This document shows, piece after piece, positions 3,001 through 36,603 of a stretch of 64,000 nucleotides of DNA. The position numbers and the translations under genes are program-made. The notes beneath the pieces are model-generated. The model was not told where the DNA came from and ran no database searches. It worked only from the letters and a program-made list of their open reading frames with translations. Source of the DNA: Basidiobolus meristosporus CBS 931.73 (taxonomy: Eukaryota > Fungi > Basidiobolomycota); NCBI GenBank assembly GCA_002104905.1, contig MCFE01000187.1, forward strand, positions 1 through 64,000, written 5' to 3'. Position 1 is the first letter of the stretch; each line of letters opens with the position of its first letter.

Positions 3001-3088
3001 TCAAGAACTAGTTACCCAGTTCCACCAACAATATCCTGCAAAACCTGCCCCAAAGGGAAACAGAGCTCCGCCTGGAAGAGGAGAATAG
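20..3088 (+). CDS. pol: Ty3/Gypsy Pol polyprotein, 5'-partial: reverse transcriptase, RNase H, integrase, chromodomain
   Basis: RT motifs [23 protein letters not shown]; RNase [14 protein letters not shown] and DKELLAI; integrase HHCC (HDSMAAGH...CDIC) and DDE core ([20 protein letters not shown]); GPF motif; chromodomain FEVKQILDS...[18 protein letters not shown]. The frame is also open from base 2 to 19, so the true start is upstream of the window. Confidence 0.95.
3074..3088 (+). other. Polypurine tract of the retroelement
   Basis: GGAAGAGGAGAATAG immediately before TGTCATG; it includes the pol stop codon TAG. Confidence 0.85.
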
Positions 3089-10400: not shown

Positions 10401-11008
10401 ATGCCAGTGACCTGAACAGGCTCCCTAGATGAAAACCAGCTTAGCCTGCAGGACAATGAGTGCTGGTCGATCGTTGCCCGATACGTTTGTCTGTGGCCGG
10501 CCATTTATGTAGTGCTATGCCTGGAGAACGAATACCTGATTGGGTAAAATATCCATAGCGCTATAGATATTTTCATCCGTGTCAATAGGAACCTCTGGTG
10601 TAACGGTACTGGTGTTATGGCAGTTGCTACAAACAATACAAAAGTCGCACTTGCTCGCTTTAGCCTCCTTCAATCGGTGATAGAATACTACTGATTTTGA
10701 CACTGATCTACGCCACATCTTATTAAACAAGGTTGGGGTTTGATCATGATACTGCCAGTTAATAAATCTTATCACCATGGCTAGCAATGAGATGTGGGTG
10801 TACAAATAGGTATCATACTTGAATGTGTGGTGTGGTGTGATGAATAAATCCCAGGCCCCTTCACGACCAAACAGTTCGCATATCACCAAGTTGCCTATTT
10901 GGCATGTAAAAAGAATGGTATTTTGAATTAGCCCATCAGTCAACCGAGTTTTTGTGTTGTGCATTAATTTGCCGGTATTATCACTCTTTGGTCCTCGTCG
11001 TACTCCCA

Positions 11009-11015
11009 TATATAA
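11009..11015 (+). promoter_or_regulatory. Putative TATA box of NRPS1
   Basis: TATATAA followed by GCCAT, 54 nt before the ATG at 11063; the paralog has a matching TATAAAAGCCAT 55 nt before its ATG. Confidence 0.6.
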
Positions 11016-11062
11016 GCCATGGAAATAAAATTCCCGACCCCCAACTACAAGAAGTCTCAACA

Positions 11063-14000
11063 ATGAACTCACCTAAGGCTGGCGTCTGTCAATTCCCACA
11101 TTTGCTAAATGGTGATTCCAAGCACAACACTGCTGTGGTTGGATTTCTTGTTAGTGACTTCAAGGAACTTAATGTGAGCACTATACACAAGCATATCCAT
11201 CTAAGTGGGATTAGCGGCATTGAAAAAGCCCTACTCTACGCTACTTGGACGGTCATGCTGAGCCTGTACACTGGGAACTCAGAGATTACTTTTGGTACAG
11301 GCTTTTTTCATCATCAAACATCGAAGTCACTGTTGGAGGACTTGCACCTCTTCCAGTCAACTTATGATCAAGAAATCGCCAAGCTAAATGTTAGCTGCTG
11401 GTTGAGGCAACTGGCACTTACCCAAACTACGGCTTCTCACGACATTGACGACTTGAATATCCAAGATACCAGTAATTTTAACACGTGTGTCATCTTCTCA
11501 GATCAACAAGGTTCCATAGATACCCACAATCTTAAGGTAATTCATTGCAAATGCGTAGACTCAATTGCCGATGCTAAAGTTCTCCACTTTGATAAGCGAT
11601 ATGCCATATACCTAGAAGTATACCAAAAAGAAGGGAACATTGCTTTCCGCATGTCCTTTGCAAATAACTACCTTGATCAAGACCAGGGAATATTACTTTT
11701 CAACCAGTTTATCTATATTGCTAAAACACTGCTTAACAATCTTGATGCACCCTTGAATACTCTCAATTGGACTCCTGAAAACGAAAAACACTTATTCTTG
11801 ACTGAATGGCAGCAAGGCAAGCCGAATTATGTTCAAGTACTTGATGATAGCTGCATCCATCATCTGATTGAGGAGCAAGTCAAGAGGACACCAAATAGTA
11901 TCGCCCTTCAATTCGAGGACAAAGATTTGGTCACATACTCAGAGTTGAACAAACGGGCCAATAAGCTTGCTCATACGCTGATCCAGATTGGTGTACAACC
12001 CGACAACGTGGTACCAGTATGCATCGAGAAATCCATCCATATGGTGGTTGCTATCCTGGCGGTCCTTAAGGCCGGGGCTGCCTATGTGCCCCTCGATCCT
12101 GAATACCCAAAAGATCGGATTCATTTCATCATACGAGATACAAATGCTAGTGTTTGTATCACCACAAGCAATTTGCAGAGGATGTTTGCTGAGGGACAAA
12201 CCCTTCGATCGCTGACGGTGGATGAGTTCGATTTCTGTGGTGACGAGCGGTCCGAGTTGAACCCCGTCATCCCTGGGTTGAAGTCCTCAAATCTTTGCTA
12301 CCTAATCTTCACCTCAGGCTCCACCGGAAAGCCCAAAGGTGTTATGCTAGAACACCGTTGCGTCGTCAATTACGTAGCTGCTCACCAGAAGATTCTGGAT
12401 TTGTCCCAGGATGACCGGTTCCTCCAGTTCGCCAACTACACCTTTGATGCGTCCATACTTGATCTGTTCGTGAATCTGACCACTGGATCCCGTCTATGCT
12501 TGGCATCGAAGAACAATTTGCTCACAGATCTCCCCGGAATGATGAACCTGATGAAGGTTACTGCAGCACAGCTGACCACAACCGTGGCTTCCCTGGTGGA
12601 TCCGAGCTCCGTGCCTACGCTCAAGCTACTTCAGCAAGGAGGTGAGATGCTCACCAAATCCGTAAGGGATGCTTGGGCCAGCAAAGTCAAGTTGCATAAT
12701 GGCTACGGCCCGACCGAAACCGCAGTCTACACCATCATCAAGCAGTCATTGAAGCCATCGACCTCCTGTGCCAATATCGGGTGGCCCATTGGCCGCAGCA
12801 AAGTTCTCATCCTGAATGATAGGTTGGAGCTGATCCCATTGGGGGCAGTGGGTGAGCTTTGCATTGGTGGACCACAGCTTGCTCGAGGATATCTCAATCG
12901 ACCTGATCTGACGGAAAAGAGCTTCGTCAGCTCCCCATTCAATCATGGCGAACGACTGTACAGAACAGGGGATCTGGGAAGATTCAACCCCGATGGCTCG
13001 ATCACCATCCTTGGGCGGAAGGATAATCAAGTCAAGTTGAACGGGCTGAGAATAGAAATAGAGGAAATAGAGCATGTATTGAACCAATTCCCAGAGGTTA
13101 GCCGCGTATCGGTCAGACTGTTGAATCGGAAGTCGAAGACATCCAAGGTGAGTAAAGTGCTGGTGGCTTTTGTAACTTTCGTCAACAAAATGTCGGATGA
13201 AGAGTCAGTATCTGTTCTTGAGTTGACAAGCTGCCCAGAAGTGGGTCAAGTACAAGAGTCTGTTCGAAAACAGCTTCCACCATATATGGTGCCCACAGTG
13301 TGGGTGCCGTTGACAAAAATGCCCATCAATACTAGCGGAAAGACCGACTTGAAGACTTTGGAACTCTTGTACACAAGCCTCGAAACTGCTCAAGACGTCA
13401 AAGAGGCCAAAGACATGCCCACCTCCGCGATGGAAGTGCTACTGCAAGAGGCTTGGGGTGAGGTGTTGAATGTTGAAAAGTCTTCAATCGGCACTGGTGA
13501 CTCCTTCTATCATTTGGGGGGCGACTCGATCTCCGCCATCCAAATATCCGCCCAATGCCGTCAAAATGGGGTGGAGGTGTCTGTGCAGAGCATATTGCAA
13601 CACCCCACCATCCGTCAGCTGGCAAACTATGCTCGGTTCACGACATTGGCGCTAGAGAAGCAGAGCATAGAGGAGGATGAGGAGGAGGATTGGAGTGACA
13701 TTCCGTTCACCCCAATCCAGCACCAGTTCTTTGGTGTCACCCAGCCTGAAGTCAATCACTTCCATTTGTCGTGGTTGGTGAGTGTCAGGCATCCAATCGA
13801 GCTACCTGCACTGAGAGGTGCGCTATTTGAGCTGATTGGCCATCACGATATGCTCAGGACTCGTTTCACCCAAGAACTAGGTCGCTGGAGACAATGGCTG
13901 GCTTCCAATGAACAGACTAATTTCGAGGTGCAGCGGCATCGAGTCTCTGGTGTTGAAGAGCTGAAGTCGAGTGTACTGAAAACACAACGAAGCCTCAACG

Positions 14001-14990
14001 TTGAGACCGGGCCAGTATCATCGTTTGTGATCTACGATCTACCATCCGGTGAGCAGCTGCTATTCATGACCATCCATCATTACATCATTGATCTTGTTTC
14101 GTGGCGTATCTTTTGGGAGGATCTGGAAAAGCTGCTGAGCGGACAGTCCTTGTCATACAAAACACTGTCATTCAGAAAGTGGAGCAGGCTGCTACAAAAG
14201 CACGCAGAGTCCTTGACGAGTGAGGACTGGCCGCAACAAGCGCCAATCGAGCCGTTGGATATTGATATGTCCAAGCTTTCTCTGAATACCATGGAAACGG
14301 TAGAAACATCATCGTTCACGCTGGATAGTGAGCACACTGCCCTCATGTTCGGTAGAAGCAATGATGCTTACGGGACGGAGGCCGTTGACTTCATGCTTGC
14401 CACTCTCGCCACCTCATACTGTGATGTGTTCCAGACCGATTCGATTACCTTTGCAACGGAAGGTCACGGACGTGAGCCATGGGATGACTCCATCGATGTG
14501 TCCCGGACAATTGGATGGTTTACCTCCATTTATCCAGTCACCATCCAGCGCAAGCGTGGGGATTCTCTGATTGACGTATTGAAGCAGACTAAAGATACCC
14601 GTCGAGCAATTCCTAACCACGGATTGGACTATGGACTTCTTCGCTATCTAAACTCGGAGCTATCCTCTAAATATAGTAGCGATCGCTTCCAGGTTGGCTT
14701 CAATTATTTTGGACGCTTCCAGCATCTGGAGAAGGGTCGCTCTCTGTTCCAGCAAGCTGCGGAGCAGTACACGTTCGATTTGAATATGATTGGTCCCAAG
14801 TGGAGAAGAATGAATGCTATCGAGGTTGAGGTCACCGTACAACGTGACAATCTGAGTGCCTCGATATCTTACAGCAACCAACTACATAATGAGAAGCAGA
14901 TCAACCAATGGCTGCAGGCATGGAAGAGGGACTTGATGGAGGCAGTCCAGATTAGTGGCAACAAGAAGAAGAGAGAACTGACCGTCTCAG
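11063..14990 (+). other. NRPS1 partial starter C domain plus module 1 (A1-T1-E1); boundaries approximate
   Basis: T1 Ser codon at 13526; E1 HHYIIDLVSW at 14075 and EGHGRE; A1 code read by eye D-A-L-Q-Q-G-G-V-Y-K. Confidence 0.85.
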
Positions 14991-17900
14991 ACATCCCGTT
15001 GCTCTGCCTCAATGCTCATCAATTGCACGGACTGTTGGAAGAGGTTGCTGCAAAATATGGCGAAGAGTTTGTGCAAAACATAGAGGACATGTATCCCTGT
15101 TGCGCAATGCAGGAGGGCCTGATCGTCGGGAATGCCCGCTCAGCCTCATCGTATCATGTTCAAGATGTGTACACTCTGCCGGATGGAGTGGACGAGGAAC
15201 AACTACTCTCAGCCTGGAGATCCACAGTCAATGATCTACCCATACTGCGCACCGTGTTTATCGAGAATTCTTACTCCTCACCCACGTTAGGAGCATATCT
15301 CCAAGTCGTTCTGCGACATGTTGATGTCGATTTCCAGCGCATATATCCAGAGAGTCAGGATATCGAAGATGCTGCACTGAACAAATATCTGGAAGCTGAT
15401 GTAGCCAAAGGATTTCCGCTTGGCCGGCCCAACATACGATTATGCTTGATACAGGGTGAGAAGAATCGGATGATTATCAGTCGTCATCATGCTATCAATG
15501 ATGGTTGGTCGGACAAAATCACCATGGCCTACTTGGAAGCCGTCTTTAACAGTACTTCAAGGCCAGCAGTGATCCCATACAAGGAGTATATCTCCTATTG
15601 CGTTAAGCAGAATGGCTCATTGAGCAACGAAGAGGGTGCTGAGTACTGGTCAACCTATCTAGCCGGTATTGATGCCAGCATCTTTCCTAAGCTTGGTGAG
15701 ACAAATGCCCGTGCTGGTCATCACCAAGTTGTGTTCAGATCACAAATTCCCATGCAGGTGCTGAAGGACTTTTCGAAGAAGGCCGGTGTAACCACGCTTA
15801 CCTTATTACAGGCAGCTTGGGGAATGATATTGCAGCCCTACTATGGAAAGGAGGACTTTGTGTATGGCGTGCTCACGAATGGCCGCAATATTTCCATGAA
15901 GCAGATCAATCACGTAGTTGGTCCGTGCATCAACACCACCCCATTAAGGATTCAGTGTCATCCAAGCACCAAGATCATGGATTGGCTAAGATCACTGCAT
16001 CAAAGCATGGTGGCCCGGATTCCATACGAGCATTGTGGTCTAAGACTGATCAAGCAATGGTGCAAACAGAGGAATTCCCAGGTCGGTTTTGATGCTATTC
16101 TCAACTTTCAGTTGTCCGAGAAAGATGATGCAAGGCAAAAGGTGACCTTCGAAATGGAGAGAATAATCGAGCCCACTGAGTATAGGCTTTGTCTTAACGC
16201 ATGGAAAGAAGGGGATAAGCTCGCCTTCAGGTTGGACTTTGACAATGCTACACTGACCAGCCACCTGGCCAATCATTTACTAGATCGCTTGGATGCTGTG
16301 ATTGGTGGCATTGTTGTTGCTGATGGTGAATCCACCGTTGCTGACATTCCATATATGTCAAATGTGGAAAGCAGCTTGATCCAGTCATTCGCTACTGGTT
16401 GCAATCAAGTCGATCCCACGTTGGAATGTTTGCACCACTTATTTGAAAAGCAGGTGGCAAAGACACCCAACAACATTGCCATCCGCTATGGAAATGATTT
16501 GCTTCTTACCTACAATGACCTTAACAAGCAATCGAATCGGTTGGCCCACTACCTGGTTAGTCAAGGAGTTGGGCCAGAGTCAATTGTGATGTTGTGTCTG
16601 GACAAATCGGTAGAAATGATAGTGGCTATGCTGGGAGTGCTCAAAGCTGGAGGCGCGTACGTACCAATAGACCCAGCAAGTCCTGTTGAGAGATCGAGAT
16701 TCGTGCAGAAGGAGACAGAGGCATCAATTGCTATTACAACAAACTCGCACAAAGAGAGATTCGAATACATCACTCTGGTGTTAATTGACAGCGAGATGAG
16801 TGCATTCCGTAACTACTCCTCTGAAAATCTGGATAGGAGCGAGATCACCGAAAAGAATCTGTGCTACGTGTTGTACACCTCAGGTTCTACCGGGACACCG
16901 AAAGGCGTGATGTTGGAACATTTAGCCGTTGTGAATTTCATTCATGCCATTAATGAAGTGTGCCAGCTCACTTACAGCGATACTTTTCTCCAATTCGCCA
17001 ACTACACATTCGATGCTTCAGTATTCGAGATATATGCCCCACTTGCAGTGGGTGCATCAGTAGGGATGATTCGGATGGATCACCTGCTGGCGAATCTAGA
17101 AGAATGGATCGACAAGCTCAAGGTCACCTTTCTGATGCTGACACCAACGATTGCCACAATGATTGATCCGCTCAAAGTACCTTCAATTAGGCGGATCCTT
17201 TTGGGTGGAGAAATGATGACCACTACAGTTCGAAACATATGGCTACCCCATGTGGAGATCAACAACGCCTATGGCCCAACGGAATCGGCTGTTATGATGA
17301 CCATCAATCCTAAAGTACACTCAGACACATCGTGCGCAAACATCGGAAGGGCTGTTGGCAACAATAGAATCTATGTTCTTGGAGCTGATCACCGCCCGGT
17401 TCCGCTTGGAGTTGTTGGGGAACTCTGCGTTGCTGGACCACAATTAGCTCGAGGCTATCTCAACAGATCCGATCTAACCGAGAAGGTATTTGTGACTGGT
17501 CCTTTTGTGTCTGAGCAACGCCTTTACAGAAGCGGAGATCTTGCTCGATTCAATGTCGATGGGACAGTGGAACTTATTGGAAGAATAGACAATCAGGTCA
17601 AGATACACGGGTTGCGAATTGAGTTGGACGAGATAGAGCATGTGCTCCACGAACACTCCAGAGTGGCCAGAGCTTGTGTGATCCCCTTGGTCACTGACCA
17701 GAGTACTAGTCATAAATCTTTGGCTGCTTTCATTACCTTTCATGGACTAGTTGACAATAGCCTGCCTATATGCACGCCTGGCGGACCAAAGAGTGAATTG
17801 TTCTCTTCGTATGTCAAGGAGGCCAGATTAATCGCTCGAAAGAAGCTACCTTCGTACATGGTACCAACTATTTGGATTCCACTTAATAGAATGCCATTTA

Positions 17901-20900
17901 CGACGAGCGAAAAGATCGATCGGAAACACTTGAAATCGTTGTATGCCAGCCTAAGTGCTCATAATCTGAGGCTACTCAATCTTGCTGATGATACTGGCCA
18001 TGCCGGAGCTAGGTCCGATTTGGAGGAAACCTGGGTCAAGCTCTGGTCATCAGTCCTCAATGTTCCATCTGTTGCTATAGGGATTCATGATTCATTCTTT
18101 AATATCGGTGGTGATTCGATCTTGGCTGTACGGCTGGTGGGCGCTGCTCGAAAGGCCCGATTTGCACTAACAGTGCAGGATCTATACACTCATCCAACCA
18201 TTGCTGAGATTGCCGAGAATATTTTTCCGATCGGTTCCGATGGTGTTGAGCCCAAATCAATCGAAAAGTATTCCCTGTTGAGCCTGGAACAATATCAGTT
18301 TGACGAGTTAGTTGAGTGTGATCTCTCTCAGCACGGGATTGATATTGAGGAGGTGGAGGATATATATCCTTGCTCGCCAATGCAAGAGGCTCTAGTAGCG
18401 CTAAGTTTCAAAGATGACTCCAGCTATCTAACCCAGCAGGTGTACAAATGCGGGCCTAATGCTGACATCAAGAAACTTCAGTCCGCTTGGAGGTCAGTGA
18501 TTGAGATAAATCCTATACTTCGGACAGTTATTCTGTTCACGAATAGTGGCTTCAATCATTTGAACGGTTTACAAGTCGTAGTTAGTAACAGCAATGTTGA
18601 CTGGCATGTTCAGGATTTCGAAGATGAAAGGTCGCTTGAAGAGCATCTACCCAAGGTTTTATTAGAGGATAAAGCGCGAGGAATATCTGCCGGAAAGCCA
18701 TTGATTCGGTTCAAGATTCTGACCACTGTGGGCAAAGCAGCATACTTCATATGGACAATCCATCACGCCCTGTACGACGGCTGGTCTATGGGTCAAATAG
18801 TCGCCGACGTGAATGCCGCCTACCAAGGCCTTGGTATGGCTATACGCCCTAATTATAGTCTGTATATCGATTATTTGCTGAGTCAAGATAAGCAACAGGC
18901 TCTACACTATTGGTCGGAAACACTTCGATCAGCGCAAGTTACTCACTTGGCTAGATCAACTGCCCATCATCAGTCCATTCATTCACGAGCCAGATACATC
19001 GAAAATCTTCATATTGATTTTACCACAGTTACTGGTGTCTATAACATAACAGCAGCTACCATCGCATACCTGGCATGGGCGCTTGTGCTGAAATCACATA
19101 CTGGTAATCCAGATGTGATATTTGGCGTAGTGAATTCCGGAAGAGATGCTCCCCTACGAGATATACAAGATATTTGCGGGCCTTGTATCAATACACTCCC
19201 GATGCGGATCACTCTCTCTGACAATCTGTCGCTTTTAGACACGTTGCTATCCATTCAGAATACTCAAAATCAACAGTATCAGTATCAGTCCATCGGCCTT
19301 CAAGATATTCTTAAACACTGCTGTGACAGTGGAGAAAGCGCATTGTTCGATTCCCTATTTGTCGTTCAAAATTTCCGCGATGAAGATGCCACTGTAGACC
19401 TCTCGACTATTGGACTACATCAGTCGGAAGCAACTATGCATATTGCCTACCCTGTAGTGATGGAGATTAGCACTAAGGGAGCTTCTTGCGAGGTTAGCCT
19501 CACGTACGATGCGCAGGCAGTGACTATGTTTGAAGCATCATGGATAGTTAAGCACTTTATTGCAGCGATTGACGTTGTAATCAATAAGTTCCACAGCATT
19601 GTTAGAGATGTGAATATTATCACTTCAGAGGAACTTCGCCTGTTGGAAAGCTGGAATGGCTCTAAGGATACTGTACAACAATCATGTTGTATTCATGAGC
19701 TGTTTGAGCGAAGAACAATAATTCATCCCGATCAGCTAGCAGTTCAATACGAAAACTCCGAAAGTATCACTTACAGTGAGTTAAATATGAAGGCCAACCA
19801 GTTAGCCCACCATCTGATTAAGCTTGGAGTTCGCCCTGACTCGATCGTTCCATTATGTCTCGACAAGTCGATCTCAATGATCGTGGCAATGCTTGCCGTT
19901 CTCAAAGCAGGCGGTGCCTATGTTCCTCTTGATCCGAACAATCCTGTGGAGCGGAACAGATTCATTATTCAGGAGACAAAGGCGGAGGTGGTGTTGACAC
20001 TGGGTCAATATACACAGTACTTCGATGAACGATCCCTGGCTTTGCTCGACATTGAAAACCTGTCGCTGAAACAGTATGACACCACTAACCCGGAAGTGAG
20101 TGGGCTAAATGAGTCGAACCTGTGCTATGTGATCTACACCTCAGGTTCTACAGGGAAACCAAAGGGAGTAATGATGGAGCATCGTGGTGTCTCAAGCTTC
20201 GTTCAGGCATTTAGCCGTGCGTGGGGAATCAACAACGAGGATTCAGTTTTACAATTCGCCAATTATACATTTGATGCGTCAGTTATCGAGATTTTCTGCG
20301 CATTGACCTCGGGAGCAAGTATATCGCTCGCCTCGAAAGATAAACTGCTATTCGATATAGAAATGTGCATAAACACAATGGGTGTGACAACTCTAATGCT
20401 CACGCCAACTATAGCAACATTAATTGACCCTATCAGGGTGCCATCAGTTAAGCGACTCGTGCTGGGGGGTGAAATGATGACTACAGCAGTTCGCGACTTA
20501 TGGTCACCCCATGCCGAGCTTTGTAACGCATATGGTCCAACTGAAGCTGCTGTGGCTATTCTTGCCAATTGGGATATAGCTGCAGATACCATGTGCACGA
20601 ATATTGGTAAGCCAATCGGAAGTAACAAGATTCTAATTATGGGGCCTGACTTACATCCTGTTCCATTGGGTGTGTTGGGAGAGTTGTGTGTTTCAGGCCC
20701 TCAGCTTGCTCGCGGATACCTCAACAGATGCGACTTGACCGAGAAAGTCTTCGTTTCAAGTCCTTTCGTGTCCAACGAGCGCATATACCGAACTGGAGAC
20801 CTGGCTCGGTTCAATGCTGATGGCTCGGTAGAACTGATGGGAAGAATCGACAACCAGATCAAGATCAATGGTTTGCGAATCGAGCTAGATGAGATCGAGC

Positions 20901-23900
20901 ATGCTCTCCATGACCACTCAAGAGTGGCCAGAGCGTGTGTGATGGCTCTGATCACTGACCAGAAGACCAGTCGTAAGTCGCTGGTGGCCTTCATGACATT
21001 CCAGGGGCTGGAGATGGCTCATGCTGATCCCAAGTTCTTGAGTGAGCTTGAGGCCGAGCCCGCCTATGAATACATCGAGGAGCTGAAGGTTATTTGCCAG
21101 AAGAAATTACCTACATACATGGTCCCCAATCTATGGCTACCGCTCAGCACTATGCCAGTCAATACTAGTGGGAAGATTGACCGCCGCAAGTTGTCAGATC
21201 TCTTCGTATCCTCGAACCTCGATGAGATCACAAGACTGTCCAAGTGTGGAAACGGACAGCGGAGACAACTCACAACACCCTTGGAGGTGAAGATCCAGGC
21301 GATATGGTCGGAGACGCTGAACATTCCGGCCGCCAGCATCACTGCCGATGACACATTCTATCAGCTAGGCGGTGACTCCATTTCAGCCATTCGAGTTTCG
21401 TCACTCTGTCGTCAGAGTGGGATCTCACTCTCGGTGAAGCAGATCATGCAAAACCCCACCATCCGTTCGCTTGCCTCAGTTGCCACCATCCAGGAAGCTG
21501 TTGCCGACGAGTCTCCTCAGTGCTCCGATGGCGATGTTATCCTCACGCCAATCCAGAGACGCTTTCTGGGAGCCCCTCAGGATAACATGCATCACTTCAA
21601 TCAATCGTGGCTTCTGAAATTACGGGAACCTACGACGAAGGAGGTACTCACCCGAGCAATCTTTGCCTTGGCAAAGCATCACGACGTGCTTCGTGGTCGA
21701 TTCCCAGAGACCCAAGGGGAACGGAGGATGACAGTCGTGCCGATGAACGAGGTCTCCTTGCAAGTCCACCACCGCCAGGTGAGATCAGTTGCAGAGCTGA
21801 AGGAGCACACCCATCAGCTGCAACGAAGTCTCAACTTGGCCACTGGACCCATGTTCCATTTCTCACTGTATGAGCTGGAAGATGGATCCCAGCTACTGTT
21901 CATGACCATCCACCATCTAATCGTTGATCTGGTGTCATGGCGCATCATATGGGAAGACTTGGAGCAGCTGCTTCAGGGCAAGGGATGTGGGTACAAGTCG
22001 ATGAGCTTCATGCAATGGAGTGCCATGCTCAACGAGTACGCCCAAGAGCTAGAGATTGACATGTGGCCGTCTCAGAAGGTTTCTGAGCCGATAGTGAGTG
22101 ATGCATCTCTCCTGGCACAGAACACATTTGAATCCACCAGATCCGTCTCCTTCACCTTGTTGGCCACCCAGACCGAAAAGCTCTTTGGCAAGTGTAACCT
22201 TCCATTCCAGACCGAAGCGACTGACCTGATGATCTCCTCGCTAGCCATTGCTTACTGCAAGGTATTCAATGTAGATAGCATGACCATCGGCATGGAGGGG
22301 CACGGAAGAGAGACCTGGCGTGATGGGATTGATGTGTCGAGAACTGTCGGCTGGTTCACCACACTCTACCCATTCGTCGTGGAGATAGCTCATCGCTCGG
22401 ATCACTTGAGTATTCTGAAGAGAGTCAAGGATCAGCGCAAACTGATGCCAGGGAATGGTATTGTCTATGGACTACTCCGGTACTTGAGCAACAAGCCTGA
22501 CAATCCATTCAGGGATGATGTGATCCAGATTGGGTTCAACTACCTTGGCCGTTTCCAGCAACTGGAGAGTAAGAACTCATTCTTTGAGCCGGTCGGAGCT
22601 CCTTATAACTTTGATATCGCCAGTATAAGTAACAAATGGATCAGAGATCATGTCTTTGACATTGTTGCTAATGTTGTTCATGACAGTTTCACAGCTGGAA
22701 TCACTTACAATCCCAACTTGCACTCGGATGAAATCGTATCGGAATGGCTTTCTGCATGGAAGGACTCGCTCAACACTTTGATCGACAGTTGTGCCTCAAT
22801 GGATGATGTGGAGCACACCCGAAGTGATTTCCCGCTAGTGAAATTCAGTGAAGCAGAGTTCGACCTGTTCTACAATCAAAACCTGCCAAATATCGGAGTC
22901 GAGCGTAATCTCATTGAAGATATTCTACCATGCACCCCGTTGCAGGAAGGACTGATAGCTGGTATGTTCAAGGATGCCAATTACTACCATGTTCAGCAAC
23001 AGTTTGAGATTACTGGTGACTTCGACCGGACAAGATTCCTAAACACATGGGGTATTATCATTCGAGATCACCCTATTCTCAGAACCATTTTTGTCGAATC
23101 CATGGTCAGTATTTCAAAGTACAATTTCCTTCAAGTCGTGATGAAGGGATTTACTCCATCCTGGTCATATTTGAGCTGCGCAAATAACTCTGTCGAGGAA
23201 GAAATTTCGTTATACTTTGCTGAAGATAAGAAGAATTCGTTCCAACTTGGACTGCCCAATATCCGTCTTGGCCTGCTAGAAGCAGACGGGGGGCAGAGGT
23301 TCTTACTTGTTAGTTGGCATCATGCCATATTGGATGCTACATCGTGGGACCTGGTTCTTCAAGACTATTACGATATTTATCATCAACAATTACGTGCCGA
23401 GACATATCCGTTTGCAAGATATGTGTCGGAGATATATGGCAAATCCTCGGATGAAGTAGACGCTGAGAAGGCGTACTGGCAGCGGAAATTTTCACAGCTC
23501 AGTAGAGCACAGTTCCCTAATCTTGGTGCTTGTAAAGGTTCTGACCCATCGACGAATCGTGCTTCTGGTTCAATCTCAATTCCAGTAGATAGAATTTCAA
23601 GGTTTGCTCAGCAGCAGAAAGTTACCATCTTTACTCTTATCAAAGCTACGTGGGCTATTCTGCTTCGAGAATATACGCAAAGCGAGGATGTAGTGTTTGG
23701 ATATGTCGTCAATGGGAGAAGTGGAGAGCTTGATGGTGTTTCAACTATTATTGGGCCTTGTATCAACACACTTCCGAATCGCACACAGTGTAATGGTGAA
23801 ACCACCATTGCTGAATGGCTCCTGCAAATACAAGAAGACTCCTCGTCAGTACTAACTTATCAGCACAGTAGTTTGCGTCAAATTCAAGAGTGGGCCGGTG

Positions 23901-26900
23901 TATCACCTTTATTTGACACTATCCTCAATTACAAATATGATTCAATGAAGCCTAACCATGCATTGGAAAATGATAAGCTAAGACTTGTTCCACTACACGG
24001 AAAAGAGGCAACTGAGGTAAACATAGATAGAACTATGCATATAGGGAGATGGCTACTAATATTCTACTATCCGATACTGTAGTATCCACTATCGTTAAAC
24101 GTATACGTGAGCAACAATGAAATTTTGTTCAGCTTAGATGCGGTCGGCGATTTAGTTTCCTACTACTTTGTTGAGCAAATCGCCAACAGCTTTACATCCG
24201 TGTTTGAGTCATTTATTGCTTTACCTTCAAACACACAGCTTCAACATATTCCCATACCACTAGAGAGCACTGCTTCTGCTGCTTATCCTACGGCATCAAA
24301 CGTACCCTCAGAGAATATAGTGTTATGTATACATCACCTCTTCGAGCGACAAGCTAAGCAATCACCTCAAAATTTAGCAGTTCAGTTCGAAAGCTCAGAA
24401 TACGTCAGTTATGATGAACTTAACAGCAGAGCCAACCAGCTAGCCCACCATCTGATTAAGCTTGGAGTTCGCCCTGACTCGATCGTTCCATTATGTCTCG
24501 ACAAGTCGATCTCAATGATCGTGGCAATGCTTGCCGTTCTCAAAGCAGGCGGTGCCTATGTTCCTCTTGATCCGAACAATCCTGTGGAGCGGAACAGATT
24601 CATTATTCAGGAGACAAAGGCGGAGGTGGTGTTGACACTGGGTCAATATACACAGTACTTCGATGAACGATCCCTGGCTTTGCTCGACATTGAAAACCTG
24701 TCGCTGGAACAGTATGACGCCACTAACCCGGAAGTGAGTGGGCTAAATGAGTCGAACCTGTGCTATGTGATCTACACCTCAGGTTCTACAGGGAAACCAA
24801 AGGGAGTAATGATGGAGCATCGCGGAGCATCAAGTTTCATTCAAACATTCAGTCGAGAATGGGGCATTGACTCCACTGATACCGCACTGCATTTCACTAA
24901 TTATACATTCGATCCCTCAGTGATTGAACTATTCTGCTCATTGGCAGTTGGTGCGTCAATCGCAATTGCCTCCAAAGACAGTCTTCTTTCTAATCTAGAG
25001 CTATGTATAAATACCATGAATGTCACGGCAATGGCTCTCACACCGACGGTTATCAATCTGATCGATCCTGTCAAGGTGCCATCAGTTAAGCGACTCGTGT
25101 TAGGTGGCGAAATGATGACCATAGGAATCCGTGACTTATGGTCACCTCATGTTGAACTTTGTAACGCATATGGTCCTACTGAAGCTGCTGTGGCTATTCT
25201 TGCCAACTGGAAGATGACTACCGAAACAGTGTGCACGAACATTGGCAAACCGATTGGAGTCAACACTGTTCTGATGATGGGGGCTAATATGAAGCCGGTA
25301 CCATTTGGTGTGATAGGCGAACTATGCCTCACGGGTCCTCAGCTTGCCCGTGGATACCTCAACAGATGCGACTTGACCGAGAAAGTCTTCGTTTCAAGTC
25401 CTTTCGTGTCCAACGAGCGCATATACCGAACTGGAGACCTGGCTCGGTTCAATGCTGATGGCTCGGTAGAACTGATGGGAAGAATCGACAACCAGATCAA
25501 GATCAATGGTTTGCGAATCGAGCTAGATGAGATCGAGCATGCTCTCCATGACCACTCAAGAGTGGCCAGAGCGTGTGTGATGGCTCTGATCACTGACCAG
25601 AAGACCAGTCGTAAGTCGCTGGTGGCCTTCATGACATTCCAGGGGCTGGAGATGGCTCATGCTGATCCCAAGTTCTTGAGTGAGCTTGAGGCCGAGCCCG
25701 CCTATGAATACATCGAGGAGCTGAAGGTTATTTGCCAGAAGAAATTACCTACATACATGGTCCCCAATCTATGGCTACCGCTCAGCACTATGCCAGTCAA
25801 TACTAGTGGGAAGATTGACCGCCGCAAGTTGTCAGATCTCTTCGTATCCTCGAACCTCGATGAGATCACGAGACTGTCCAAGTGTGGAAACGGACAGTGG
25901 AGACAACTCACAACACCCTTGGAGGTGAAGATCCAGGCGATATGGTCGGAGACGCTGAACATTCCGGCCGCCAGCATCACTGCCGATGACACATTCTATC
26001 AGCTAGGCGGTGACTCCATTTCAGCCATTCGAGTTTCGTCACTCTGTCGTCAGAGTGGGATCTCACTCTCGGTGAAGCAGATCATGCAAAACCCCACCAT
26101 CCGTTCGCTTGCCTCAGTTGCCACCATCCAGGAAGCTGTTGCCGACGAGTCTCCTCAGTGCTCCGATGGCGATGTTATCCTCACGCCAATCCAGAGACGC
26201 TTTCTGGGAGCCCCTCAGGATAACATGCATCACTTCAATCAATCGTGGCTTCTGAAATTACGGGAACCTACGACGAAGGAGGTACTCACCCGAGCAATCT
26301 TTGCCTTGGCAAAGCATCACGACGTGCTTCGTGGTCGATTCCCAGAGACTCAAGGGGAACGGAGGATGACAGTCGTGCCAATGAACGAGGTCTCCTTGCA
26401 AGTCCACCACCGCCAGGTGAGATCAGTTGCAGAGCTGAAGGAGCACACCCATCAGCTGCAACGAAGTCTCAACTTGGCCACTGGACCCATGTTCCATTTC
26501 TCACTGTATGAGCTGGAAGATGAATCCCAGCTACTGTTCATGACCATCCACCATCTAATCGTTGATCTGGTGTCATGGCGCATCATATGGGAGGACTTGG
26601 AGCAGCTGCTTCAGGGCAAGGGATGTGGGTACAAGTCGATGAGCTTCATGCAATGGAGTGCCATGCTCAACGAGTACGCCCAAGAGCTAGAGATTGACAT
26701 GTGGCCGTCTCAGAAGGTTTCTGAGCCGATAGTGAGTGATGCATCTCTCCTGGCACAGAACACATTTGAATCCACCAGATCCGTCTCCTTCACCTTGTTG
26801 GCCACCCAGACCGAAAAGCTCTTTGGCAAGTGTAACCTTCCATTCCAGACCGAAGCGACTGACCTGATGATCTCCTCGCTAGCCATTGCTTACTGCAAGG

Positions 26901-29900
26901 TATTCAATGTAGATAGCATGACCATCGGCATGGAGGGGCACGGAAGAGAGACCTGGCGTGATGGGATTGATGTGTCGAGAACTGTCGGCTGGTTCACCAC
27001 ACTCTACCCATTCGTCGTGGAGATAGCTCATCGCTCGGATCACTTGAGTATTCTGAAGAGAGTCAAGGATCAGCGCAAGCTGATGCCAGGGAATGGTATT
27101 GTCTATGGACTACTCCGGTACTTGAGCAACAAGCCTGACAATCCATTCAGGGATGATGTGATCCAGATTGGGTTCAACTACCTTGGCCGTTTCCAGCAAC
27201 TGGAGAGTAAGAACTCATTCTTTGAGCCGGTCGGAGCTCCTTACAACTTTGATCCGGCGGAAGTTTGTTTCGAGCGTTGCAGGGACCATGTCTTTGACAT
27301 CGTTGCTAATGTTGTTCATGACAGTTTCACAGCTGGAATCACTTACAATCCCAACTTGCACTCGGATGAAATCGTATCGGAATGGCTTTCTGCATGGAAG
27401 GACTCGCTCAACACTTTGATCGACAGTTGTGCCTCAATGGATGATGTGGAGCACACCCGAAGTGATTTCCCGCTAGTGAAATTCAGTGAAGCAGAGTTCG
27501 ACCTGTTCTACAATCAAAACCTGCCAAATATCGGAGTCGAGCGTAATCTCATTGAAGATATTCTACCATGCACCCCGTTGCAGGAAGGACTGATAGCTGG
27601 TATGTTCAAGGATGCCAATTACTACCATGTTCAGCAACAGTTTGAGATTACTGGTGACTTCAACCTGGCCAAGTTCCAAAATACGTGGGAAACCCTTGTT
27701 CGGGATCACGCCATTCTACGCACTGTTTTTGCAGAGTTTTCCACAATTGCATCACGCTTTAACTTCTTGCAGGTTGTGATGAAGCCCTCTAGACTTGACT
27801 GGTCTTTTGTTCACTGCACGCATAATTCTCTGGCGGAAACCATCACTGAAAATCTAGTTGCCGACAAAGCCAAATCCTTTCAGCTAGGTCAACCTAATTT
27901 AAGATTTATCTTGGTGGAAACGGATTTACAACACCGCGTACTCCTCATCAACTGGCACCATGCTATTCTTGATGCCACAGCGTGGGATATTGTACTGAAT
28001 GACTTCTACCATGTATATCATCAAAAAGCTCGTGTGGAAACCTATCCATTCGCGAAGTTTGTGGAGGAACTGTGTAGTAAACCCTCACAAGAACTAGATG
28101 CCGGGAAATCCTACTGGCAGGGTAAACTCTCACAGCTCAGCATTCCCCAATTCCCAAATCTGGGGGTCTCTAAGGACCTTTCTTCCACATTTTGTCGTGT
28201 AGAAGGCTCTATTGAAATCCCAATCAATAGGATTTCACAATTCGCTCAACGTCTTAACGTAACTCCATTTATATTGATCAAAGCAGCTTGGGCAATTCTA
28301 TTGCGGGAGTATACCCGCAGTGAGGATGTGGTCTTCGGGTATGTGATCAACGGAAGAAATGGTGAACTTGAAGGCGTTTCGACTATTGTTGGCCCGTGCA
28401 TCAACACCATTCCTTGTCGCGTGCATTGCGAGAGCGAGGGGAATGTTGTAACATGGCTGCAGGAAATCCATCAGAGCTACATATCCGACCTTTCCTATCA
28501 ACAGAACAGTTTGAGAGATATTCAAGAATGGGTGGGAACATCCCCACTGTTCGACACTATTATTAATTATAGGGTTGGCGACTCGTCTGGGACCGACACT
28601 ACTAATATTCGCAATGAAACGGAAGCAGAAAATGGGATTAAGCTTGTCCCGAAAGTCAGTAATGAAAGAACAGAGGTTGGAAAGGGGATTTATAGTAACT
28701 TGATGCAATCGTGTTACTAATGCAACGTATGGCTAATTCACTCTATCTTATAGTATGCATTAGTATTGAACATCGGCTCAAGCGGCAGTGAATATGTGTT
28801 CATTATCGATGCCAACGGTACACTGATACCACGACAATTTGTGAATCAAATTGCAAATGACTTCAAAACACTTTTTGGAGCCATGGTGCATGCAGTTCCT
28901 GACACCCAGATCAGTGATTTCTGTGTTTCGTTAAGCAAGACCCAAGCTCCCGTGACCAACCCGGCAACTACTTCATCTTGCCTAACGACGACAGATAGGT
29001 GTATTCACCAACTGTTCGAGGAGCAGGCAAAAGTGAATCCTCAGCGCATAGCGATCCAGTTTGAACTCTGTGAGTCTGTCTCTTATGAGGAGCTCAACTG
29101 CAGAGCTAACCAGCTGGCTCATCATTTGATTAAGCTTGGTGTCCGCCCAGAGTCAATGGTGCCCTTGTGCCTTGACAAATCTGTTGAAATGGTAGTGGCA
29201 ATGCTTGCTGTTCTCAAGGCTGGTGGTGCTTATGTTCCCCTTGATCCGAACAATCCAGTCGAGCGCAACAGATTCATCCTTGCTGAGACAAATGCACAGG
29301 TTGTAGTGACACTGGATGTGTACAGATCTACTTTCGATACAGTGACTGTGGTGCTCCTTGACTCCGACCTGGATCGTATTCGCACAAATCCCGAGGATAA
29401 TCCCGAGGTCACTGGCTTGAGTAGCTCGAACCTTTGCTACGTTCTGTTCACCTCTGGCTCAACCGGAACACCGAAGGGAGTGATGCTAGAGCACGCCGCG
29501 GTGGTTAGCTTCATTCACGCAATCCAACAAGAGTACGACTTCAGCCCCAAAGACTCGATACTGCAGTTCGCCAACTACACCTTCGATGCTTCGGTGTTCG
29601 AGATATACGTTCCCCTTGCCATCGGAGCTTCCGTAGCTATGGCACGAAAGGACTACCTACTCACGGATCTTGAGGAATGTATCAGGGAGCTGAGAGCAAC
29701 ATTTTTGATGCTGACCCCTACAATTGCTACTCTGATTGACCCACTTGAGGTCCCATCGGTACGGAACCTGATGTTCATAGGGGAGATGCTGACAACCACT
29801 GCACTGAACAAGTGGTCGCCGTATGTCGACCTGAGCAACGGTTACGGGCCGACTGAGTCGGCAGTCCTGACGACTGTCAACACGCAAATGAGCTCGACTA

Positions 29901-32900
29901 CCTCATGCTCGAATGTCGGCAAGCCAATCGGAAACAATAGGCTCTATGTTCTCGGTGACGACAACTACCCTGTTCCGTTCGGAGTGGTTGGTGAGCTTTG
30001 TGTTGCTGGATCCCAGCTCGCTCGGGGCTATCTGAACAGACCTGATCTGACGGACAGCGCGTTCATCACAAGCCCGTTCGTGTCGGCAGAACGTCTGTAT
30101 AAGACTGGGGACCTTGCTCGATTCAATAGTGACGGATCGGTGGAGCTGGTTGGGAGAAAAGATAACCAGATCAAGATCCATGGGCTGAGAATCGAGTTGG
30201 ATGAAATCGAGCATGCTCTCCATCAGCACTCCAAAGTCGCCAGAGCGTGTATTGTTCCTTTGGTCACTGACAAAGCCACTGATCACAAATCACTGGTTGC
30301 CTTTGTGACTTTCAACGACCTCGCTGACAGCAACTCACCGGTTGGTCTGATCGAGGAAAGTAACGACCAGAAGGTTGTAGAGTACTTCAAGGAGATCAAG
30401 GCACTTCTTCGGAAGAAACTATCTACTTACATGCTGCCTAACATATGGGTTCCTTTGAATAGAATGCCTACCACAACGAGTCAGAAGACAGATCGAAAGA
30501 GCCTAGCTGCACTGTATGCATCCGTGGATAAGGAGGATTTGATGAAGTGGAATCATTCCGACGCCTCTGGCCACGTTGGAGCAAGAACAGCAATGGAGCA
30601 GAGCTGGGTGGAACTCTGGTCGGCGGTTCTCAAGATCTCTCCAGATACGATTGGATCGCACGACTCTTTCTTCAGTCTCGGAGGTGACTCTATCCTAGCC
30701 ATCAGGCTGGTGGGTGTTGCTCATAAGGCTGGGTTCACGCTGACAGTCCATGATCTATATTTACATCCTACTATTGCTGAGCTTGCAATCACTTGTTTCC
30801 CCTTAAGCTCAGCAATTCCGGAAACCATGCCGGTTGAGAAATACTCCCTGCTCAAATTGGATGTTGAACAACTAGACCAAATGATTGAATACGAACTACC
30901 TCAGCATAACATTATGCCTGACGATGTCGTTGACATCTACCCCTGCTCTCCGATGCAAGAGGCACTTGTGGCTCTGAGCCTACAAGACAGCTCGAGCTAT
31001 GTCAGTCAGCTTGTGTACAAGTGCGAAGGCAACGTGGACCTGGAGCGACTTCGCGCCGCCTGGCACTCGGTGATTGAAGCAAACCCCATTCTTCGAACAG
31101 CGATCTTGTTCACCACTAGTGGCTTTGCTCATCTGAATGGCCTACAGGTTGTTCTTCGTAGCAAGAGCATAGAGTGGGATGTTCAGGAGTATGAGGATGC
31201 CACCTCGCTCGAAAACAGCTTGGCTCGAGCTTTGGAAGCTGACAGGTCTAAAGGAGTATCTGTGGGGCAACCACTGACTCGGTTCGCTTTGCTGAAGACC
31301 GCAGGCCCGAATGCATACCTCGTATGGACCATTCATCATGCCTTGTACGATGGCTGGTCTATGAATCACATCGTGTCGGATGTAGTGGCTGCCTATCAAG
31401 GTCATGATTTGCCGGCCAGACCACCGTACAGCATGTACATCAACTACCTGTTAGACACGGACAAGAGTCAAGCCATCAAGTACTGGAAGGAGAACTTGAG
31501 CTCAGCAACTTCAACACATTTAGGTGGCAATTCTCGAACTACTGAAGAGACGCAAATATCATCTGCAATCATTGAGAACATCCAGGCGGACTTCAGTTTA
31601 CTTGCTAGTGAACATAGCCTTACAATAGCTACCGTTGCATATTTAGCCTGGGCCATGGTGCTGAAGTATCATACTGGTAATCCGGACGTAGTGTTTGGAG
31701 TGGTGGACTCAGGTAGGAGCATTCCTCTCCACAACGTTCAAGATATTTGCGGTCCCTGTATCACGACATTGCCCACCCGCATCAATCTCTCAGATACTCA
31801 ATCCCTTTTGGATGCTCTGCGATTGATCCAAAACGCCCAGATTCAGCAACGTCAGTATCAGTCTATCGGGTTGCAGGATATTCTCAGGTATTGCTGTGAC
31901 ACGAGTGAAAGCTCACTCTTCGACACCCTCCTGGTTGTTCAAAATATCAACCAGGAGGGCGATAATGGAGGACTCTCTTCCATCGGCTTGGTGCAGTCTG
32001 TCACGTCTATGCCTATAGACTATCCAATTGTTATGGAGATAAGCTCTGAAGGCACGGATCACACAGTTGCTCTGACGTATAATGCGAAGATCTTGACCGA
32101 GTTTGAAGCATCCTGGATTATGAAGCATTTTGTGGAGGCGATCAAGGCGATTCTCTCCAATGTTCACGCTGCTGTCAAAGATGTCAGGGTTACAACTGCG
32201 GCAGAATTAGAGCTCATCGAGAGTTGGAGTACCGTAAGAAACACTGCATTACAATCTGAGTGCATTCATAGGTTTATTGAGCAACAGGCATTGCTCCACC
32301 CAGAGCATGTTGCAATCCAGTTCGAGGATACTGAATATGTTACTTATGGCGAACTCAACCGCAGAGCTAACCAGCTGGCTCATCATTTGATCAAGCTTGG
32401 TGTCCGTCCTGACTCCATAGTACCTCTCTGTCTTGATAAATCAGTTTCAATGGTAGTGGCAATGCTTGCAGTGCTTAAAGCCGGTGGTGCCTATGTTCCG
32501 CTTGACCCCAACAACCCTGCGGAGCGAAATGAATTCATTCTAAGGGAGACAAATGCTGAAGTCGTTATTACTTTAGATACATACAAGCAGAATTTCGACG
32601 GCCGAACCTGTGTTCTACTTGATTCTGAGGATCTGTCGCTGGTACAGAACTGCATTGATAACCCTCAGGTGATCGGTCTGGAGAATTCTAGCTTATGCTA
32701 TGTAATATATACCTCTGGCTCCACTGGATTGCCCAAGGGAGTGATGATGGAGCACCGAGGTGTTTCAAGCTTCATCCAAGGATTCCAGTACGTATGGAAC
32801 ATCGACGTATCGGACTCAGTCCTACAATTTGCCAATTATACCTTTGATGCATCCGTGATTGAGATATTCTGCGCATTGGCTGCAGGTGCCTGTGTTGCAC

Positions 32901-36308: not shown

Positions 36309-36603
36309 CGGAACTCTTAACCATATCATAGTACCTGAGTAACCAGCGTCCGTGACCTTTGGAACCAATTAATCCCACCTGTCCGACATGGCCACTACCA
36401 CATTCCGCACGAATCGCTTTTCAAGTGATCTGGTCGGTCATACATTTTGTCCACCTGATAGTGGTAGAGTTGTTGAGCAATTGGGGGCACGCATATAATG
36501 GGTGAGAAGCTGGCCAATACACACATCAAGTAGCTCTATTTCACCATCCACTAAGTGTCTCTGCCATTACTCCCTTTGCCTGTGACTTGACTTTGTTGTT
36601 AGT

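What the first reader, a model, noticed from the sequence alone, without database searches (positions are those of the whole stretch)
19793..25336. Natural A-domain subdomain swap signature between modules 3 and 4
With a fixed 4638 bp offset, A3 and A4 are near-identical from 19793 to 20184 and again from 20699 onward through T, E and into the next C. They diverge only across 20185-20698 versus 24823-25336, the segment between the A3 and A6 core motifs that holds the substrate pocket (DAIMVGAVAK versus DPIAVGAVAK). This matches the flavodoxin-like subdomain exchange described for bacterial NRPS evolution and engineering (e.g. hormaomycin), here in an intron-containing fungal gene. It could be a swap-in of a new pocket, or homogenisation of the flanks with selection protecting the pocket.
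Basis: partly seen in the sequence, partly recalled or inferred. Interest (0 to 1): 0.75.

Follow-up and report, generated by a model that had tools for sequence, protein, structure and literature searches.

The report
Peptide-synthetase modules identical except the substrate pocket
Two neighbouring modules of a giant peptide-making enzyme gene in the fungus Basidiobolus meristosporus are almost letter-identical except for the 514-base piece that forms the amino-acid pocket, most likely because repeated copying between the modules keeps everything else alike while the pocket stays different; this way of evolving is known from bacteria and seen here in a clean fungal example.

Summary
At a fixed offset of 4638 bp, modules 3 and 4 of a six-module NRPS (10952-36247, + strand) are 99.2-100% identical over 19793-20184 and 20699-23023. 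The exception is a 58-bp patch in the E domain. They are only 69.5% identical over 20185-20698, and the edges are stepwise. This core runs from 7 codons after motif A3 into motif A6. It holds all nine variable specificity-code positions: A3 is DAIMVGAVAK, the same as A6, and A4 is DPIAVGAVAK.

Synonymous divergence is about 0.02 in the flanks and saturated in the core. A simple recent tandem duplication is excluded. The rest of the 4638-bp period, which is C4 versus C5 with their introns, is old: 57% amino-acid identity and saturated pS.

The A4 core is not foreign. Its closest known relative is the A3 core (68% aa), and the best public hit is 65%. Trees place it as the fast-evolving sister of A3. 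A 132-bp middle segment has intermediate divergence.

The best reading is an old module duplication, followed by gene conversion that homogenises the flanks while the pocket subdomain escapes. A swap-in from an unsampled donor is less likely. This is a known kind of NRPS evolution, shown here in an intron-bearing, bacterial-like fungal gene. Other first-stage notes on this window flagged related mosaics.

The parts
10952..36247 (+). NRPS1: one reading frame with two phase-0 introns. Domain order: (partial C)-A1-T-E-C-A2-T-C-A3-T-E-C-A4-T-E-C-A5-T-C-A6-T-E-TE. The true start codon was not determined.
   Evidence: ORFs, Pfam, motif map, NCBIfam TIGR01733 and TIGR01720
19793..20184 (+). A3 N-terminal flank, from just after motif A1 to 7 codons after motif A3. 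It is 99.2% identical to 24431-24822 in A4.
   Evidence: dS 0.022
20185..20698 (+). A3 pocket core, about GrsA residues 206-379, ending inside motif A6. Code DAIMVGAVAK. It is 69.5% nt and 68.6% aa identical to the A4 core.
24823..25336 (+). A4 pocket core. Code DPIAVGAVAK. Long branch, with 25-29 unique residue changes against 10-11 in A3.
20437..20568 (+). Middle of the core (partner 25075-25206), with intermediate divergence. pS is 0.36 for the A3-A4 pair only; every other paralog pair has pS 0.59 or more here.
   Evidence: binomial p about 4e-4
20699..22605 (+). Rest of A3 (motifs A6-A10 and Asub), T3 and most of E3. It is 99.5% identical to 25337-27243.
22606..22663 (+). Short divergent patch in E3 (partner 27244-27301), 22/58 mismatches. 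It is not a frameshift. The E3 version keeps the family's I..W.R pattern and the E4 version does not.
22664..23023 (+). End of E3 and the first ~40 residues of the next C domain. It is 100% identical to 27302-27661 and marks the right end of the homogenised block.
23024..24430 (+). Remainder of the 4638-bp period: C4, with intron 24017-24082. It is old relative to C5 (27662-29068, intron 28676-28753): 57% aa identity, pS 0.81.
53797..54488 (+). Mirror case in the neighbouring NRPS2. This 692-bp block is identical to 60319-61010 (A2 versus A4 of NRPS2), set in flanks only 58-62% identical. Its left junction lies 39 nt after the start of motif A3; the NRPS1 junction lies at 47 nt.

Best explanation
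Modules 3 and 4 of NRPS1 are old tandem paralogs of an A-T-E-C unit. Ectopic gene conversion between them recently homogenised everything from just after A-domain motif A1 to about 40 residues into the next C domain. Two islands escaped: the 514-bp pocket subdomain and a 58-bp patch in E.

The pocket subdomain escaped because the two modules load different amino acids, so converted pockets are removed by selection. In addition, once the core had diverged by about 30%, heteroduplex can no longer form across it. Conversion tracts therefore stop at the conserved nucleotide islands of motifs A3 and A6.

The result is two modules with identical scaffolds, carrier and epimerase parts but different pockets.

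Shown: the mosaic, the age contrast, the old C domains and introns, the sister relationship and fast evolution of the A4 core, and the junctions at conserved motifs.

Inferred: that selection on substrate choice maintains the island, and that conversion ran from module 3 to module 4.
For: 1. Age contrast. dS is 0.017-0.022 in all flank segments, and their divergence is homogeneous (chi-square p=0.29). The core has pS 0.70 (saturated) and dN 0.2.

2. The rest of the repeat period is old. C4 versus C5 shows 57% aa identity and pS 0.81. Their introns lie at the same site and phase but differ in length and sequence, and the intron is absent from C2. Both modules therefore predate the homogenisation. 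C4 and C5 each match best the positionally equivalent C domain of NRPS2.

3. The A4 core is local, not foreign. Its nearest relative is the A3 core (68% aa), then A6 (65%), then B. ranarum P0356 (65%). Trees give ((A3,A4),A6) with support 98 and 90. Placing A4 outside the clade is rejected at AU p=0.006.

4. The A4 core evolves faster. Tajima relative-rate counts are 25-29 versus 10-11, chi-square 5.4-9.3. A3 keeps the same code as A6, whereas A4 differs at positions 236 and 278.

5. The middle of the core has pS 0.36 only for the A3-A4 pair. This indicates an older exchange between the two cores, and so repeated conversion over time.

6. Both core edges sit at peaks of nucleotide conservation among seven distinct A-domain lineages: motif A3 at 20117-20183 and motif A6 at 20681-20747.

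7. The locus is full of other recent exchanges: N1A1=N2A1, N1A5=N2A3=N2A6, N2A5~N2A7, and N2A2 core=N2A4 core.

8. This matches the published model in which duplicated modules are held in concerted evolution and parts escape through functional divergence or through reduced recombination (PMC4256081, Figure 4 legend).
Against: - Saturated dS prevents dating the core against the C domains.
- Without the middle segment, the topology tests no longer reject alternative placements of A4 (p-AU 0.067-0.084).
- The sharp single-step edges would also fit one swap event.
- The mirror case in NRPS2 proves that a core alone can be copied between diverged A domains at this locus.
- Only two of the ten code positions differ, so different substrate use is plausible but not shown.
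- The rest of the genome, and the DNA of NRPS2 modules 5-7, could not be searched for a donor.
Confidence: 0.66

Rival explanations
1. True subdomain swap-in. A module 4 whose A-T-E part was already a near-copy of module 3 received a pocket subdomain by recombination from another A domain that is unsampled or since lost. The crossovers fell at motifs A3 and A6.
For: The edges are stepwise. The neighbouring NRPS2 shows exactly such a copied core: a 692-bp identical block in 58-62% identical flanks, with its left junction within 8 nt of this one. Acore subdomain swaps are the dominant natural route in bacteria (PMC8097286). Several large B. meristosporus NRPS genes exist (PMC7466969), and not all of them could be screened.
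Against: The nearest known relative of the A4 core is the A3 core itself. No public protein exceeds 65% aa identity. The A4 core is nested in the local A3/A6 clade. The middle of the core has intermediate divergence specific to the A3-A4 pair. A donor would have to be a lost sister of A3.
Confidence: 0.2
2. One discontinuous conversion event with no role for selection. A single long heteroduplex or repair tract from module 3 to module 4 skipped the most diverged stretches (the core and the E patch) purely because mismatch-rich DNA is rejected.
For: Flank divergences are statistically the same on both sides: 3/392, 9/1907 and 0/360, p=0.29. The junctions lie at conserved nucleotide islands. A second small unconverted island exists in E.
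Against: It does not explain why the core diverged in the first place, nor why A4 changed 2.6 times faster at the protein level, including at two pocket positions. The intermediate-age middle segment implies more than one event.
Confidence: 0.1
3. Assembly artefact: the near-identical 3.2-kb copies arise from mis-joined or duplicated reads rather than from the real genome.
For: Near-identical tandem repeats are a classic source of assembly error. No read data were available here.
Against: The copies differ at 12 scattered sites, a 58-bp patch and the 514-bp core. The period is a multiple of three and the frame stays open through both copies. The unique C4 and C5 sequences and two different introns separate the copies. 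The sister gene NRPS2 has the same A-T-E, A-T-E arrangement at the equivalent place and is in the public annotation.
Confidence: 0.04

Closest known systems
Natural Acore / flavodoxin-like subdomain exchanges in bacterial NRPSs: the hormaomycin and microcystin examples and the survey by Baunach et al. 2021 (PMC8097286); engineered FSD swaps (PMC8616955)
   Same: The breakpoints lie inside the Acore. The variable segment carries nine of the ten specificity residues. The C-A linker side, Asub and the A-T interface are left untouched. Core identity (68%) is within the range in which engineered swaps work (>55%, PMC8616955).
   Different: No donor module is identifiable here, and the odd core is the sister of its partner's core. 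The pattern therefore looks like protected divergence rather than import. The host is a eukaryote and the gene has spliceosomal introns.
Concerted evolution of NRPS/PKS modules, with escape by functional divergence (Medema et al. 2014, PMC4256081, Figure 4 model)
   Same: Duplicated modules are kept alike by internal recombination. A part breaks out and is then protected by selection, by sequence divergence, or by both. Domains cluster by gene rather than by position.
   Different: The unit that escapes here is a subdomain of 171 residues, not a whole domain. In the sister gene of the same locus the same subdomain is also copied on its own.
Bacterial-like ('surfactin-like' clade) NRPSs of Basidiobolus and Mortierella (Tabima et al. 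2020, PMC7466969; Wurlitzer et al. preprint 10.1101/2020.08.21.262279)
   Same: The A domains are bacterial-type: the best solved-structure matches are LgrA, TycA and GrsA, ahead of fungal SidN. The gene has E domains and a terminal TE. The organism is B. meristosporus CBS 931.73.
   Different: In the passages retrieved with term searches, which found no occurrence of 'recombination', that paper describes gene content and horizontal transfer. It does not describe intragenic mosaicism or subdomain-level exchange.
NRPS2 A2/A4 identical-core block in the same window (53797-54488 = 60319-61010)
   Same: Same gene family and same left junction just after motif A3. The same subdomain behaves as a separate unit.
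   Different: The polarity is opposite: the core is identical and the flanks are diverged. Its right junction is at motif A8 rather than A6.

Membership tests
NRPS adenylation domain (ANL superfamily) | Match to AMP-binding / amino-acid adenylation models and presence of core motifs A3, A5, A7, A8 and A10 | tested here: met
   Pfam PF00501. TIGR01733 scores 415 bits against a cutoff of 317. Motif map. 1AMU E=1.5e-91.
Natural Acore/flavodoxin-like subdomain swap (donor-derived) | Abrupt breakpoints inside the Acore that bracket the specificity residues, with Asub and linkers unchanged | tested here: met
   Edges at 20185 and 20698, between motifs A3 and A6. Code positions 235-331 lie inside. 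Flanks are 99.2-99.5% identical.
Natural Acore/flavodoxin-like subdomain swap (donor-derived) | The exchanged segment is more closely related to another module (the donor) than to the module its flanks match | tested here: not met
   The closest relative of the A4 core is the A3 core (68%), and the best other hit is 65%. A4 is sister to A3 in trees. The search was incomplete for this genome.
Concerted evolution / intragenic gene conversion between modules | Paralogous segments within the gene are far more alike than their positional homologs in the sister gene, with near-zero dS | tested here: met
   Flank dS 0.02. The same segments are 62-76% aa identical to NRPS2 counterparts.
Concerted evolution / intragenic gene conversion between modules | The duplication is older than the homogenised tract: adjacent segments of the same repeat unit are deeply diverged | tested here: met
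   C4 versus C5 shows pS 0.81 and 57% aa identity. The introns share site and phase but are 66 and 78 nt long and dissimilar.
Concerted evolution / intragenic gene conversion between modules | Tracts of different ages, indicating repeated events | tested here: inconclusive
   Three divergence classes are seen: 0.02, about 0.5 and saturated. The intermediate class rests on 34 synonymous sites.
Functionally distinct A domains (different substrates) | Different specificity code and different substrate in assays | not testable with these tools
   The codes differ at 2 of 10 positions, 236 A/P and 278 M/A. No predictor or assay was available.
Epimerization domain following T3/T4 | C-superfamily domain after T, followed by the TIGR01720 region, with spacing of about 650 residues from T to the next C active site | tested here: met
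   Pfam Condensation stretches. TIGR01720 scores 99.5 bits against a cutoff of 74.2. Spacing. Epimerase activity itself was not tested.

The most novel reading that the evidence does not exclude
In this fungal locus the pocket subdomain behaves as a free-standing evolutionary unit in both directions. In NRPS1 it is shielded while its surroundings are homogenised. In NRPS2 it is copied alone into a diverged A domain. The junctions recur at the same conserved motifs. If this is general for the horizontally acquired NRPS family of Basidiobolus, these genes give a naturally validated set of subdomain boundaries and compatible scaffolds. They would also show that subdomain-resolved concerted evolution operates in a eukaryote after the genes gained introns.
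Probability: 0.45. Interest if true: 0.55.

Novelty: new member of a known kind. Interest (0 to 1): 0.4.

Why it matters
The pair gives a clean natural experiment. Two modules in one protein are identical in scaffold, Asub, carrier and epimerase and differ by 54 residues confined to the pocket subdomain. Testing A3 against A4, and exchanging their cores, would show which residues set specificity in these poorly understood bacterial-like fungal NRPSs.

The locus also extends subdomain-level recombination and concerted evolution from bacteria to an intron-bearing gene of an early-diverging fungus. It predicts a hexapeptide whose residues 3 and 6 are the same building block, whose residue 4 is different, and whose D residues sit at positions 1, 3, 4 and 6.

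The mechanism itself is not new.

Tried and rejected
- **Simple recent tandem duplication:** rejected. 1407 bp of the 4638-bp period is 25-65% identical.
- **Donor inside the window:** rejected. No other A-domain core exceeds 72% nt identity to either core.
- **Donor in public proteins:** not found. Three word-index searches and one exhaustive representative search were run. The representative search ranked hits by summed multi-domain scores, so I re-scored all 397 retrieved proteins locally with BLASTP.
- **Whole-length search with the NRPS2 frame:** A 601-residue region then worked.
- **DNA of NRPS2 modules 5-7:** Those modules were compared at the protein level only, from a gene model that looks mis-spliced in module 2.
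- **E-domain patch as a compensated frameshift:** rejected by nucleotide alignment.
- **Residue-by-residue 1AMU alignment:** not displayed, because the five alignments shown were all LgrA. The code register rests on the reported 1AMU range plus motif positions.
- **Branch-wise dN/dS:** not attempted, because dS is saturated.
- **Joined exons:** the spliced protein was never joined. All searches used the three exon-frame pieces separately by reference, so no full-length NRPS1 protein search was run.
Full report
**1. What is in the window**

One long + strand frame runs from 10952 to 36247. It is interrupted only by in-frame stops at 24080, 28718 and 28751. These stops lie in two short GT..AG, phase-0 introns at 24017-24082 (66 nt) and 28676-28753 (78 nt). 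Aligned to the intron-less C2 domain, the introns appear as clean insertions of 22 and 26 residues at the same site.

Pfam, NCBIfam and a motif map give this order: (partial C)-A1-T-E-C-A2-T-C-A3-T-E-C-A4-T-E-C-A5-T-C-A6-T-E-TE.

A second, paralogous NRPS occupies 47848 to beyond 64000. Its frame is 100% identical over the 601 residues scored to the public protein K493DRAFT_351909 of Basidiobolus meristosporus CBS 931.73. This identifies the genome.

The A domains are bacterial-like. The best solved-structure matches are LgrA, TycA and GrsA (1AMU, E=1.5e-91), ahead of fungal SidN. This agrees with the 'surfactin-like' horizontally acquired NRPS clade described for Basidiobolus (PMC7466969).

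I never joined the exons. Every search used the three exon-frame pieces separately by reference.

**2. The observation**

At a fixed offset of 4638 bp (3 x 1546) the two modules align without any indel. Mismatch counts:

| Segment (module-3 coordinates) | Mismatches / length |
|---|---|
| 19793-20184 | 3/392 |
| 20185-20698 | 157/514 |
| 20699-22605 | 9/1907 |
| 22606-22663 | 22/58 |
| 22664-23023 | 0/360 |
| 23024-23900 | 339/877 |

- Beyond about 23900 there is no similarity at this register.
- All transitions are stepwise.
- The homogenised block begins immediately after A-domain motif A1. It ends about 40 residues into the following C domain.
- The divergent core begins 7 codons after the A3 motif and ends inside the A6 motif.
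- In GrsA numbering the core is about residues 206-379. This rests on the reported 1AMU range 190-413 for the query starting at the A3 motif, which puts the pocket aspartate at 235.
- The core therefore holds all nine variable specificity-code positions.
- The codes are DAIMVGAVAK for A3 and for A6, and DPIAVGAVAK for A4.

It omitted only the short patch in E and the right-hand end of the block.

**3. Ages**

Nei-Gojobori estimates give dS 0.017-0.022 for every flank segment. The core has pS 0.70 (saturated) and dN 0.2. Flank divergence is homogeneous (p=0.29).

The core itself has three parts:
- Left part: pS 0.88.
- Right part: pS 0.72.
- Middle part, 20437-20568: pS 0.36.

That low middle value is specific to the A3-A4 pair. 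All other paralog pairs have pS 0.59-0.84 in this segment. The binomial p is about 4e-4.

The part of the repeat period outside the homogenised block is also old. It consists of C4 and C5 with their introns, and shows pS 0.81 and 57% aa identity. A simple recent tandem duplication of 4638 bp would have made these segments identical, so it is excluded.

The shared intron site and phase in C4 and C5, absent from C2, show that the A-T-E-C unit was duplicated after the intron was gained. The duplication therefore happened in the fungal lineage.

C4 and C5 each match best the positionally equivalent C domain of NRPS2. This suggests that both modules already existed before the two genes separated.

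**4. Is either core foreign?**

*Within the window.* No other A-domain core is closer than 72% nt to the A3 core or 70% nt to the A4 core.

*Public proteins.* I searched with:
- the A3 core, candidates 2407-7658 aa;
- the A4 core, candidates 845-2690 aa;
- an exhaustive representative search with the A4 core;
- a search that retrieved the two largest B. meristosporus relatives found.

I then re-scored all 397 retrieved proteins locally.
- Best hits for the A4 core: N1A3 68%, N1A6 65%, B. ranarum K7432_011761 65%, NRPS2 A5/A7 60%.
- Best hits for the A3 core: N1A6 77%, K7432_011761 72.5%, NRPS2 A5/A7 69%.

*Trees.* Maximum-likelihood trees of the core place A4 as sister of A3, with A6 next. Support is 98 in the large set and 90/90 in the focused set. 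The A4 branch is about three times longer than the A3 branch.

*Topology tests.* An AU test rejects A4 falling outside the A3/A6/NRPS2-A5/A7 clade (p=0.006). Without the middle segment the preferred topology is unchanged, but the alternatives are no longer rejected (p 0.067-0.084).

*Rates.* Tajima relative-rate counts give 25-29 changes unique to A4 against 10-11 unique to A3.

*Flank trees.* Both flanks fall in the same clade as the core.

Nothing in the A3/A4 pair looks imported. A4 looks like a fast-evolving old sister of A3. A3 keeps the ancestral code that it shares with A6.

**5. Junctions**

I measured nucleotide conservation among seven distinct A-domain lineages. Both core edges coincide with conservation peaks: motif A3 at 20117-20183 and motif A6 at 20681-20747.

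The neighbouring gene holds the mirror image. A 692-bp block (53797-54488 = 60319-61010) is identical between NRPS2 A2 and A4, in flanks only 58-62% identical. Its left junction lies 39 nt after the start of the A3 motif, against 47 nt here. Its right junction is at motif A8.

Other recent exchanges in the locus:
- N1A1 = N2A1.
- N1A5 = N2A3 = N2A6.
- N2A5 ~ N2A7.

Recombination among modules is therefore frequent at this locus, and it resolves at conserved motif-coding islands.

**6. Interpretation**

The best-supported history is:
1. An old duplication of an A-T-E-C unit.
2. Functional divergence of the pocket of module 4.
3. Repeated gene conversion that keeps the non-specific parts alike, with the most recent round at dS about 0.02.

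The pocket subdomain stays outside the conversion tracts for two reasons. Converted pockets would change the product. In addition, 30% mismatch blocks heteroduplex formation, so tracts stop at motifs A3 and A6.

This is the published qualitative model of module evolution, applied at the scale of a subdomain: concerted evolution, with escape through functional divergence or reduced recombination (PMC4256081). The resulting pattern looks the same as the Acore subdomain swaps that dominate bacterial NRPS diversification (PMC8097286; also discussed in PMC9205934). It also corresponds to the flavodoxin-like subdomain used in engineering (PMC8616955).

Direction of conversion has only weak support. 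The shared T-E sequence is closer to NRPS2 T4-E4, the positional homolog of module 3 (71.5%), than to T5-E5 (66.6%). This hints at conversion from module 3 to module 4.

**7. Rivals**

- **Swap-in from an unsampled or lost donor.** This remains possible, at about 0.2. The edges are sharp, the mirror case proves that such copying happens here, and I could not search the rest of the genome at the DNA level.
- **A single discontinuous conversion with no selection.** This explains the equal flank ages. It does not explain the accelerated protein evolution of A4 or the intermediate-age middle segment.
- **An assembly artefact.** This is unlikely given the scattered differences, the preserved frame, the unique C domains and introns between the copies, and the equivalent architecture of NRPS2. 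It needs reads to exclude.

**8. Verdict**

The finding is a clean example of a known evolutionary pattern, here in an intron-bearing fungal gene. It is not a new kind of system. Its value is as a natural experiment for specificity determinants and subdomain boundaries in bacterial-like fungal NRPSs.

Noticed in passing
window 19793-23023 vs 24431-27661: All 12 scattered differences in the homogenised flanks are transitions, 7 of them at third codon positions. Under a 2:1 transition bias the chance of 12 out of 12 is about 0.008. This may reflect a strong transition bias or a deamination-type process acting on repeats.
   Followed up: partly
window 24017-24082 and 28676-28753: Two phase-0 introns sit at the same site in the C4 and C5 domains and are absent from C2. 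The intron was therefore gained before the module duplication, so the duplication took place in the fungus rather than in a bacterial donor.
   Followed up: partly
window 22606-22663 vs 27244-27301: A nine-codon island of divergence lies inside otherwise identical E domains. The E3 version fits the family pattern shared by the other four distinct E domains in the window, with conserved I, W and R. The E4 version does not. It is not a frameshift, and no donor is present in the window.
   Followed up: partly
window 53797-54488 vs 60319-61010: A 692-bp block is perfectly identical between NRPS2 A2 and A4 inside diverged flanks. This is a genuine copied pocket subdomain, with junctions at motifs A3 and A8.
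   Followed up: yes
window 29102-30313 vs 56671-57882; protein P0251 residues 4388-4889 vs 6759-7244: Further recent homogenisation: NRPS1 A5 is 96-99% nt identical to NRPS2 A3 and, from the protein model, 94-99% aa identical to NRPS2 A6. NRPS2 A5 and A7 are 86-98% aa identical across all three A-domain segments.
   Followed up: partly
window 20-3088 (+): An intact-looking 1022-residue ORF encodes a Ty3/gypsy-type chromodomain retrotransposon Pol (RT, RNase H, integrase, chromo). It lies about 8 kb upstream of NRPS1.
   Followed up: partly
window 36597-36991 vs 38907-39316: A direct repeat of about 400 bp at 77% identity lies in the AT-rich spacer between the two NRPS genes. Its nature is unknown.
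   Followed up: no
protein P0251 (public model of NRPS2), residues ~1363-1908: The public gene model has two A3 motifs only 545 residues apart and no T motif between them. The window frame shows a complete module 2. The model therefore appears to splice out part of module 2.
   Followed up: partly
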